Source: Schmidtea polychroa
Lineage: Eukaryota
DNA: 64,000 nt
NCBI GenBank assembly: GCA_044892525.1
Contig: CM097887.1
Span: 1,488,001 to 1,552,000 of the forward strand
Direction of reading: 5' to 3'
Below are positions 3,493 through 4,242 of this stretch, in pieces. The notes below the pieces were generated by a model that was not told the origin of the DNA, did not search any database, and worked only from the letters and a program-made list of their open reading frames with translations. How positions within the stretch are numbered: the first letter of the stretch is position 1; every line of letters begins with the position of its first letter. The position numbers were made by a program, and so were the translations under genes.

Positions 3493-4242
3493 TTATTCTC
3501 CCCACTCCGTGTCTTTTAACAATTCATCTAGGTCGAAGAATTCGGCGGCGTTCTCTTCCCATGTCACGCCGGCGGCTGAGATAATCCGTGCCGGAATTCC
3601 TGTCGTTAGATCGATGGATGTGTGCGGACTGTCAGTATTGACGGTATTTCTCGTTGAGGGATCGTTTGACTTCGTTGATGCTCGTTCGCGCTGCCTCTGC
3701 TTGCGCTTGACTCGAGATAATTGCTTACGCTTGGATTTCGAAGTGGACGGATGATTTTGTGATACAGTTGATGAAGACATGATATGGGGCTGTACTTTAC
3801 TAATCCCGGTGAAGATAAGGTCCGGACATTTGGGAGAGAGCTCGGCCTCTACGCAATCGTGACAAGACTTCGTGAGCGGTGATGAAGGCTTGGCGGATGT
3901 ATCGTGGTGCACGGGGAAGATGTTGTCGGCTTCGTTTATCGGGATTTTGACAATTCGTCGTGTTGTTGCTGCTTGTAAATACACCTTGTGCAACGCTTCT
4001 GATTGTTCTTTTATCAGGCTTCTTTGTGCACGACTCTCAGAAATTAGAGCGTCACGACAATGCTCGCTTCGATATAATTTTTTATTGACTTCCTTCATTT
4101 GAGCGGGGGTAAACCAGGTACCCTCCAACTCGTCTATCTTCTTCTTATAACGCCCTATTTGAGCTTGTAAGTCCTTGATTATCATATTCTTATCTGAGCA
4201 GGAAAAACAGGGCTTGAGTACCGGTTTTGCGCTTGGCAGCAT
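3493..4242 (-). CDS. Orphan 249-aa protein, intact member (copy A) of a dispersed unknown family: N-terminal coiled coil, TWxxP motif, HH motif, Ser/Pro-rich linker, basic NLS-like tract
   Basis: Uninterrupted single-exon ORF, GC-richer than its flanks. ATG lies 9 nt after a 3' splice-acceptor-like TTATTTTTCCTTATAG (AG at 4253-4252), and an AATAAA lies downstream. Aligns by eye with decayed copies at 26137 and 58184. No family recognised. Confidence 0.6.
   Translation of the reverse strand: MLPSAKPVLKPCFSCSDKNMIIKDLQAQIGRYKKKIDELEGTWFTPAQMKEVNKKLYRSEHCRDALISESRAQRSLIKEQSEALHKVYLQAATTRRIVKIPINEADNIFPVHHDTSAKPSSPLTKSCHDCVEAELSPKCPDLIFTGISKVQPHIMSSSTVSQNHPSTSKSKRKQLSRVKRKQRQRERASTKSNDPSTRNTVNTDSPHTSIDLTTGIPARIISAAGVTWEENAAEFFDLDELLKDTEWGE

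What the first reader, a model, noticed from the sequence alone, without database searches (positions are those of the whole stretch)
3493..4242. Unrecognised dispersed gene family: intact founder ORF with two diverged relatives 22 kb and 54 kb away
Seen: three loci align co-linearly at protein level although none is annotated as related. Block 1 is A ELEGTWFTPAQMKEVNKKLYRSEHCRDALISESRAQR, B RVKTTWLAPEKAHALN*RIYRLERAQDEIVTESN and C QMESTWPYPEKERALYQRIT*LEKNRDEVIRESRSQR. Block 2 is A QRSLIKEQSEALHKVYL and B KRLVIQS*HEVLLKNYI. Block 3 is A INEADNIFPVHH, B LWEINIIPSHHITGD and C LMELDIILIHHLYGE. The basic tail is A LSRVKRKQRQRERA and C HTRVRRKRRQRA. All three are intergenic, have single-exon coding regions, and sit behind splice-acceptor-like sequence. 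Inference: three deeply diverged copies in 64 kb implies a high-copy, mobile or virus-derived family encoding a small nuclear coiled-coil protein, with no transposase, RT or capsid gene recognisable next to it. This is the best candidate for an undescribed system in the window.
Basis: partly seen in the sequence, partly recalled or inferred. Interest (0 to 1): 0.82.

Follow-up and report, generated by a model that had tools for sequence, protein, structure and literature searches.

The report
Unannotated flatworm coiled-coil gene family
The window, from a flatworm genome, holds one intact gene and two decayed copies of a small protein family that matches no described family; whether the copies spread as ordinary gene duplicates or on a mobile element cannot be decided from this window.

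Summary
ORF A (3493..4242, minus strand, 249 aa) is intact. Loci B (about 25685..26137, minus) and C (58184..58701, plus) are co-linear relatives far above chance. No shuffle of A reaches their scores. A profile built without A finds A at E 1.2e-20, and nine outside proteins each hit all three loci. B and C are broken by a few stops and frameshifts.

The family matches nothing in Pfam, PDB sequences, PDB folds, predicted viral folds or viral contigs. All nine database relatives are merged gene models, each fused to a different unrelated host gene.

A's predicted protein has a confident two-helix hairpin, a disordered linker, an Arg/Lys-rich stretch and an acidic tail. A neighbouring proteasome exon places the window in a flatworm.

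- The copies share no termini or flanks.
- No second ORF is linked to them.
- There is no viral match and no poly(A) or duplication scars.

It is not excluded either. A and B keep a splice acceptor directly before the ATG, which argues against mRNA-mediated copying. My best reading is a lineage-restricted family of nuclear coiled-coil proteins evolving by birth and death (confidence 0.45). The main rival is an ORF of an undescribed mobile element (0.33).

The parts
3493..4242 (-). Copy A: intact 249-codon ORF, the only unbroken family member in the window
   Evidence: The profile without A gives E 1.2e-20. The frameshift-aware alignment shows 0 stops and 0 frameshifts.
3949..4200 (-). A residues 15-98: predicted two-helix hairpin (helices 15-40 and 46-98) with a conserved turn. 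It holds 12 of the 14 invariant family columns.
   Evidence: AlphaFold2 with alignment A1 gives pLDDT 81-97 for residues 21-90.
3667..3747 (-). A residues 166-192: Arg/Lys-rich stretch (12 K/R in 27 residues), a putative nuclear-localisation or nucleic-acid-binding segment
   Evidence: Predicted helix 172-189 at low confidence. Relatives carry an Arg-rich run at the same relative position.
4243..4270 (-). Pyrimidine tract plus AG ending 2 nt before A's ATG: candidate acceptor for a 5'-UTR intron or spliced-leader trans-splicing
   Evidence: background 1.2% of ATGs
3355..3367 (-). ATTAAA and AATAAA poly(A)-signal hexamers 125 and 132 nt after A's stop codon
25685..26137 (-). Copy B: pseudogene with its own ATG behind a pyrimidine tract plus AG. 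It has 2-3 in-frame stops and 0-2 frameshifts depending on the comparator. The basic and acidic C-terminal third is not detectable.
23786..25707 (.). 30-bp tandem array (64 units, 94% matches) that B's reading frame runs into. It stands where the 3' third of B would be expected.
58184..58701 (+). Copy C: pseudogene with an ATG but no acceptor-like site, 2-3 in-frame stops and 1 frameshift. It keeps the basic stretch before its terminal stop.

Best explanation
A, B and C belong to an undescribed, taxonomically restricted protein-coding gene family of a flatworm genome that evolves by birth and death. A is a working gene; B and C are paralogues that coded for most of their history and were disabled recently. 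The copies arose by DNA-level duplication that carried the 5' splice acceptor along, not by reverse transcription of mRNA. Shown: the homology, the intactness of A, the counts of breaks in B and C, the predicted helical hairpin, the basic stretch, and the acceptor-like site before the ATG of A and B. Inferred: the protein pairs through its conserved two-helix hairpin, enters the nucleus or binds nucleic acid through the Arg/Lys-rich stretch, and recruits partners through its acidic tail. Also inferred: the mRNA receives its 5' end by cis- or spliced-leader trans-splicing, as many flatworm mRNAs do.
For: Homology is far above chance. A is open for 249 codons in DNA of 34-38% G+C, has 14 of 14 invariant family columns and has poly(A) signals 125-132 nt downstream. 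B and C are only 33-41% identical to any relative, yet carry just 2-3 stops and 0-2 frameshifts over 110-135 codons. Such divergence with so few lesions means long evolution under coding constraint followed by recent decay. B and C are as close to outside relatives as to A, so the lineages are old. Only the coding block is shared: there is no common flank, terminus or second ORF, and no LTR or TIR around A. A and B keep a pyrimidine tract plus AG within 5 nt of the ATG (P about 4e-4), which a copy made from spliced mRNA would lack. Unrelated host exons lie between the copies: ankyrin repeats, and a proteasome alpha-6 exon whose best hits are flatworms. Spliced-leader trans-splicing is widespread in flatworms (PMC5832876, PMC12582326). 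The structure model gives helices 15-40 and 46-98 at high confidence.
Against: All nine database relatives are fusions to different unrelated genes (SNF transporter, subtilase, GDC-P, actin, CRAL_TRIO, mitochondrial L21, ABC transporter, ribosomal S4e). Only one fragment is stand-alone. This pattern is also what a soft-masked repeat would give. Two of three copies are dead, they lie on different strands, and they are 22-32 kb apart with other genes between, which looks more like dispersal than tandem duplication. No expression data, no orthologue and no genome-wide copy number are available. The taxon of the relatives is unknown. The proposed function rests on a predicted fold and on composition only.
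Confidence: 0.45

Rival explanations
1. The module is the ORF of an undescribed mobile element, non-autonomous or with an accessory-protein-only structure, or a long-resident selfish gene. A, B and C are separate insertions from old subfamilies, and A is a still-coding or domesticated copy.
For: All nine outside relatives lie beside different unrelated host genes and fall into subfamilies of 45-76% identity. The ORF is single-exon. Two of three copies here are dead and the orientations are mixed. The window is rich in transposons, with Penelope-like pieces at four places and a hAT remnant. B and C resemble outside relatives as much as they resemble A. Some relatives carry a PPPY motif and an Arg-rich run, as many Gag-like proteins do (the comparison is from my own knowledge).
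Against: There are no shared termini, LTRs, TIRs, target-site duplications or poly(A) tails. No RT, transposase, integrase or capsid ORF lies next to any copy; the nearest Penelope-like piece is about 9.5 kb from B. There are no near-identical copies in the window, and none above 76% identity among the database relatives. Only nine relatives turn up in an exhaustive search of 1.8 billion representatives, which is few for a repeat. Pfam transposon ORF1 and Gag models do not match.
Confidence: 0.33
2. The family is an endogenous viral element: a gene captured from a virus of flatworms and then duplicated.
For: It is a single-exon ORF without cellular homologues. It has an arginine-rich stretch, and some relatives have a PPPY motif. 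One relative gives a weak sub-threshold hit to Pfam REV over the Arg-rich run (E 0.0013).
Against: No relative was found in 2.9 million viral contigs. No predicted viral structure matches at E <= 0.001, and TM-scores stay at or below 0.28. There is no viral Pfam family above threshold, and the REV hit covers only low-complexity Arg residues. No neighbouring virus-like gene is present. A host-type splice acceptor sits before the ATG of A and B.
Confidence: 0.05
3. The three-way similarity is a chance or compositional effect of coiled-coil-like sequence, and only A is a real feature.
For: Coiled-coil and basic segments are compositionally biased. The A-versus-B and A-versus-C scores alone are modest at 33-38 bits.
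Against: None of 400 composition-preserving shuffles reaches 33.5 bits. Independent outside proteins hit A, B and C co-linearly. Specific non-repetitive residues are shared at the helix turn and in the second helix.
Confidence: 0.01

Closest known systems
Taxonomically restricted (orphan) multigene families of flatworms that evolve by birth and death
   Same: Several diverged paralogues, a mix of intact and decayed copies, no homologue outside a narrow set of genomes, and fast sequence change outside a short conserved core.
   Different: Members lie on both strands 22-32 kb apart with other genes between, rather than in a tandem array. The database relatives each have a different neighbour. 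No expression or function is known.
Coiled-coil ORF1 proteins of non-LTR retrotransposons (L1 or L2 type) and the coiled-coil ORF1 of some Penelope-like elements (PMC8557442, Fig. 1 legend)
   Same: A small protein with an N-terminal coiled coil followed by a basic, possibly nucleic-acid-binding region. It is single-exon and multi-copy, and Penelope-like elements are present in the same window.
   Different: No RRM/CTD, esterase or zinc-knuckle domain is present. No RT/endonuclease ORF lies downstream of any copy, and there is no 3' poly(A) or repeat tail. Pfam models of such ORF1 proteins do not match. This is a resemblance in layout only.
Basic-region plus leucine-zipper style nuclear factors
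   Same: A helical pairing module plus an Arg/Lys-rich stretch plus an acidic tail. Two family members give weak sub-threshold hits to the HALZ leucine-zipper model (E 0.026).
   Different: The basic stretch lies about 70 residues after the helices, not directly before a zipper. The helices are predicted to fold back as a hairpin. No bZIP or other DNA-binding Pfam family matches.

Membership tests
Non-LTR retrotransposon ORF1p | Recognisable ORF1 domain (Transposase_22/RRM-CTD, esterase, PHD or CCHC knuckle) | tested here: not met
   Pfam scans of A and seven of the nine relatives give no such family.
Non-LTR retrotransposon ORF1p | ORF2 with endonuclease and RT directly downstream, and a 3' poly(A) or simple-repeat tail | tested here: not met
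   No ORF above 110 aa and no conserved coding block lies downstream of A, B or C. No poly(A) run follows C or A.
LTR retrotransposon or retroviral Gag | Capsid or zinc-knuckle domain, and flanking long terminal repeats | tested here: not met
   No Pfam Gag family matches. There are no direct repeats beyond AT-rich low complexity around A and no dispersed DNA repeat at A, B or C.
Penelope-like element accessory ORF | Physical linkage to an RT plus GIY-YIG ORF in the same unit | tested here: not met
   Penelope-like pieces lie at 15.9-16.3, 36.06-37.42, 38.3-38.5 and 40.8-41.3 kb. The nearest is about 9.5 kb from B, and none is beside A or C. The profile finds no module next to them.
Endogenous viral element | Sequence or fold homology to a protein of a known virus | tested here: not met
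   Viral contig scan found none. The BFVD fold search found none at E <= 0.001. Pfam found none.
DNA transposon (hAT or other) passenger or accessory gene | Terminal inverted repeats and target-site duplication bracketing the ORF, with a transposase in at least some copies | tested here: not met
   Inverted repeats around A are short AT-rich chance matches. The hAT remnant at 61425..61775 (-) ends about 2.7 kb beyond C and points towards it, so C lies outside that unit.
Lineage-restricted host gene family (birth and death) | Several paralogues with at least one intact gene that shows host gene signals | tested here: met
   A is intact, has an acceptor-like site before the ATG and has poly(A) signals. 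B and C are decayed paralogues.
Lineage-restricted host gene family (birth and death) | Stable, syntenic positions in related species and a modest genome-wide copy number | not testable with these tools
   Neither the rest of this assembly nor related flatworm assemblies can be searched. DNA of the nine relatives is not on record.
Lineage-restricted host gene family (birth and death) | Transcription and translation of the intact member | not testable with these tools
   No expression data are available.
bZIP transcription factors | Basic DNA-binding region directly N-terminal to a leucine zipper, matching the bZIP Pfam models | tested here: not met
   No bZIP match was found, and the order of the segments is reversed.

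The most novel reading that the evidence does not exclude
The module marks an undescribed kind of selfish or mobile unit in flatworms. It would be a single coiled-coil, basic-protein gene that spreads at the DNA level together with its own splice acceptor, so it can plug into host transcription units and spliced-leader trans-splicing. It would encode no recognisable transposase, RT or capsid, and its spread would be catalysed in trans by something else.
Probability: 0.1. Interest if true: 0.75.

Novelty: new member of a known kind. Interest (0 to 1): 0.4.

Why it matters
Flatworm genomes, which include those of major parasites, hold many genes without known relatives. This family is invisible in current resources. 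It has no Pfam model, and every database member is hidden inside a merged gene model, so it also corrupts the annotation of eight unrelated host genes. A profile of the conserved 110-residue core would let annotators separate those fusions and count the family across flatworms. If the copies prove to be mobile, the family would be a case of dispersal without any recognisable enzyme gene. If they prove to be host genes, it adds a candidate fast-evolving nuclear coiled-coil protein.

Tried and rejected
- **Word-indexed protein search with A:** nothing found.
- **Pfam and PDB sequence searches with A and with profile A1:** only sub-threshold noise, namely GPS2_interact, HALZ, Atg9 and Mbp1.
- **Fold searches of the AlphaFold model:** the PDB and BFVD searches gave no match at E <= 0.001. 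Most of the model is low-confidence, so only the hairpin could have matched.
- **Viral-contig scan** and **metagenome-contig scan** (a first attempt failed for lack of a conserved stretch): no relative.
- **Exact-sequence look-ups** of A, the proteasome ORF, P0003 and P0005 on public contigs: not on record. No DNA context of relatives could therefore be studied.
- **blastn and tblastx of flanks, and a self-comparison of the window:** no shared flank and no second conserved ORF. The B-versus-C tblastx hits between the two 30-bp arrays are low-complexity artefacts.
- **Search for Dymeclin exons upstream of A,** to test whether A is the downstream gene of a host transcription unit: two Pfam batches gave nothing beyond one sub-threshold exon-sized hit at 11196..11552. 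I dropped this line.
- **Conservation of A's acidic C-terminal tail with relatives:** it looked present by eye, but the score is below shuffled controls and I make no claim for it.
- **Rfam and tRNA scans of the window:** empty.
- **Reading the stops in B and C as short introns or recoded codons:** rejected. They fall inside co-linear conserved blocks with no extra sequence, they are of more than one stop-codon type, and A and the proteasome exon read normally with the standard code.

Full report
**1. What is at the coordinates**

- Window 3493..4242 (minus strand) is an ATG-to-stop ORF of 249 codons, called A here.
- A's ATG lies 2 nt behind a pyrimidine tract plus AG. ATTAAA and AATAAA hexamers follow the stop codon by 125 and 132 nt.

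**2. Is the three-way likeness more than chance? Yes.**

- tblastn of A against the window finds two other places only. B is at about 25796..26077 on the minus strand (37.7 bits, E 1e-5). C is at about 58268..58432 on the plus strand (33.5 bits, E 2e-4).
- Four hundred residue shuffles of A, and four hundred of its first 120 residues, never exceed 30 bits against the same window.
- An exhaustive HMMER search of 1.84 billion representative proteins with A gave seven relatives, with E from 3e-7 to 1e-4. A profile search added two more.
- A profile built from those outside proteins without A finds A at E 1.2e-20. It also finds pieces of B and C in co-linear order and finds no fourth copy.
- Every outside relative with the N-terminal core hits A, B and C by tblastn.

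I wrote a frameshift-aware protein-to-DNA alignment that returns only scores, counts and outer bounds. Its results are below.

| Locus | In-frame stops | Frameshifts | Other |
|---|---|---|---|
| A | 0 | 0 | intact |
| B | 2-3 | 0-2 in the best-scoring alignments (3 with one weaker comparator) | see below |
| C | 2-3 | 1 | see below |

- B (outer bounds 25685..26137, own ATG) has lost any detectable basic and acidic C-terminal third. Its frame runs into a 30-bp tandem array of 64 units at 23786..25707.
- C (58184..58701) keeps the basic stretch before its terminal stop.
- B and C are only 33-41% identical to any relative over 110-135 codons. They match outside relatives as well as or better than they match A.
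- So few lesions on such deep divergence mean that both lineages coded for protein for most of their history and decayed recently. This is an inference.

When I noticed this I switched to counts and outer bounds only.

**4. The protein**

- AlphaFold2 with a five-sequence alignment predicts helices at residues 15-40 and 46-98 (pLDDT 81-97 over residues 21-90). It also predicts a low-confidence helix at 172-189. The rest is disordered.
- Fourteen columns are invariant among A and the relatives. They cluster at the turn between the two helices, in the second helix, and in a short Pro/His motif near residue 110.
- Residues 166-192 hold 12 Lys/Arg in 27 residues. The last 34 residues hold 9 Asp/Glu.
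- Relatives carry an Arg-rich run at the same relative position, and some carry a PPPY motif that A lacks.
- The tail of A is not demonstrably homologous to the relatives' tails.
- My working model is inferred, not shown. It is a helical-hairpin pairing module, a basic nuclear-targeting or nucleic-acid-binding stretch, and an acidic partner-binding tail.

**5. What it is not**

- A and seven of the nine relatives match no Pfam family.
- There is no PDB sequence match, no PDB fold match, no predicted viral fold match, no viral contig match and no metagenome contig match.
- Flanks of A, B and C share nothing beyond AT-rich low complexity, at the DNA or the protein level. No dispersed DNA repeat touches them.
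- There are no LTR- or TIR-like repeats around A, and no poly(A) run follows A or C.
- No RT, transposase or capsid ORF is adjacent to any copy. The Penelope-like pieces (RT plus GIY-YIG at 36059..37420, with further pieces near 15.9-16.3, 38.3-38.5 and 40.8-41.3 kb) and the hAT remnant (61425..61775) are separate units.

**6. What speaks for dispersal**

- All nine database relatives are UniParc/MetaClust-only sequences. Eight of them are fusions of the module to an unrelated host domain: SNF transporter, subtilase, GDC-P, actin, CRAL_TRIO, mitochondrial L21, ABC transporter and ribosomal S4e. The ninth is a 94-aa fragment.
- They are 35-76% identical to each other.
- So in at least one other genome the module lies beside many different genes, on the same strand, and gene predictors merged it with them.
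- Two readings fit this. The module could be a soft-masked repeat into which evidence-seeded gene models were extended. Or it could be an orphan gene family whose stand-alone models were discarded for lack of evidence, leaving only the merged ones. I could not fetch their DNA, and their species is unknown.

**7. Context and taxon**

- The window has about 34% G+C and 12 runs of N, which I left untouched.
- A proteasome alpha-6 exon at 38351..39163 has its best hits in flatworms. Cestodes give 65-69% identity, a monogenean 64% and trematodes 56-59%. The window is therefore from a platyhelminth that has no close relative in the protein collection.
- Spliced-leader trans-splicing is common in flatworms (PMC5832876, PMC12582326).
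- A and B both have a pyrimidine tract plus AG within 5 nt of the ATG. Only 27 of 2222 ATGs in the window have such a site, so P(at least 2 of 3) is about 4e-4, on criteria chosen after looking.
- A copy made from a spliced mRNA would not carry the acceptor. The copies were therefore more likely made at the DNA level with their 5' context. This is an inference.

**8. Weighing**

- The host-family reading (0.45) best explains the constraint history, the host-type gene signals and the absence of any element structure.
- The mobile-element reading (0.33) best explains the different neighbours of all relatives, the mixed orientation and the high share of dead copies.
- A viral origin (0.05) has no positive evidence.
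- Chance similarity is excluded.
- The decisive evidence is a genome-wide and cross-species census with flank alignment, together with transcript data. Neither can be obtained with this window alone.

**9. Novelty and score**

- The family itself is undescribed, but a lineage-restricted multigene family with pseudogenes is a known kind of thing.
- I rate it a new member of a known kind, with interest 0.4.
- The most novel reading still open is a selfish single-gene unit that spreads with its own splice acceptor and without any enzyme gene. I give it probability about 0.1, and it would deserve an interest of about 0.75 if true.

Noticed in passing
window 36059..37420 (+); also 15908..16302, 38306..38522, 40814..41296: Penelope-like retroelement. 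One ORF has RVT_1 plus GIY-YIG domains and runs out of a masked N stretch. Three further diverged fragments (70-76% DNA identity) include a second GIY-YIG piece.
   Followed up: partly
window 38351..39163 (-): Proteasome alpha-6 exon. It matches flatworm proteins over residues 20-192, and its best hits are cestodes at 65-69%. The last roughly 57 codons of the open frame coincide with a Penelope-like repeat fragment, so the frame probably runs from the exon into an intron or an insertion.
   Followed up: partly
window 23786..25707: 30-bp tandem array of 64 units at 94% identity that starts inside the 3' part of pseudogene B. The first units are open in B's frame, but most later units carry a stop. 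Whether the unit arose from B's own sequence is unknown.
   Followed up: partly
window 61425..62224 (-): hAT transposase remnant. The C-terminal dimerisation domain matches at E 1e-4, just above Pfam's cut-off. It lies about 2.7 kb beyond copy C, and no linkage to C was found.
   Followed up: partly
window 53227..54383; 41944..42965; 32533..33070: Three more tandem arrays: a 30-bp unit with 40 copies, a G+C-rich 48/100-bp unit with 20 or 10 copies, and an 11-bp unit with 49 copies. The 11-bp array produces a spurious 'Colipase-like' Pfam hit when translated.
   Followed up: no
window 49179..51195: A thrice-repeated pattern of N runs of like lengths separated by about 104-bp (TTA)n-like stretches, which suggests a masked tandem or nested repeat.
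   Followed up: no
window 3068..3136 (+): Just downstream of A on the opposite strand, an ATG opens 21 codons that end at a GTGAGC donor-like site.
   Followed up: no
window 34551..34994 (-) and 11196..11552 (-): An ankyrin-repeat exon (Pfam E 3e-9) and a sub-threshold Dymeclin-like exon (E 1e-4). These are host gene pieces lying between the family copies.
   Followed up: partly
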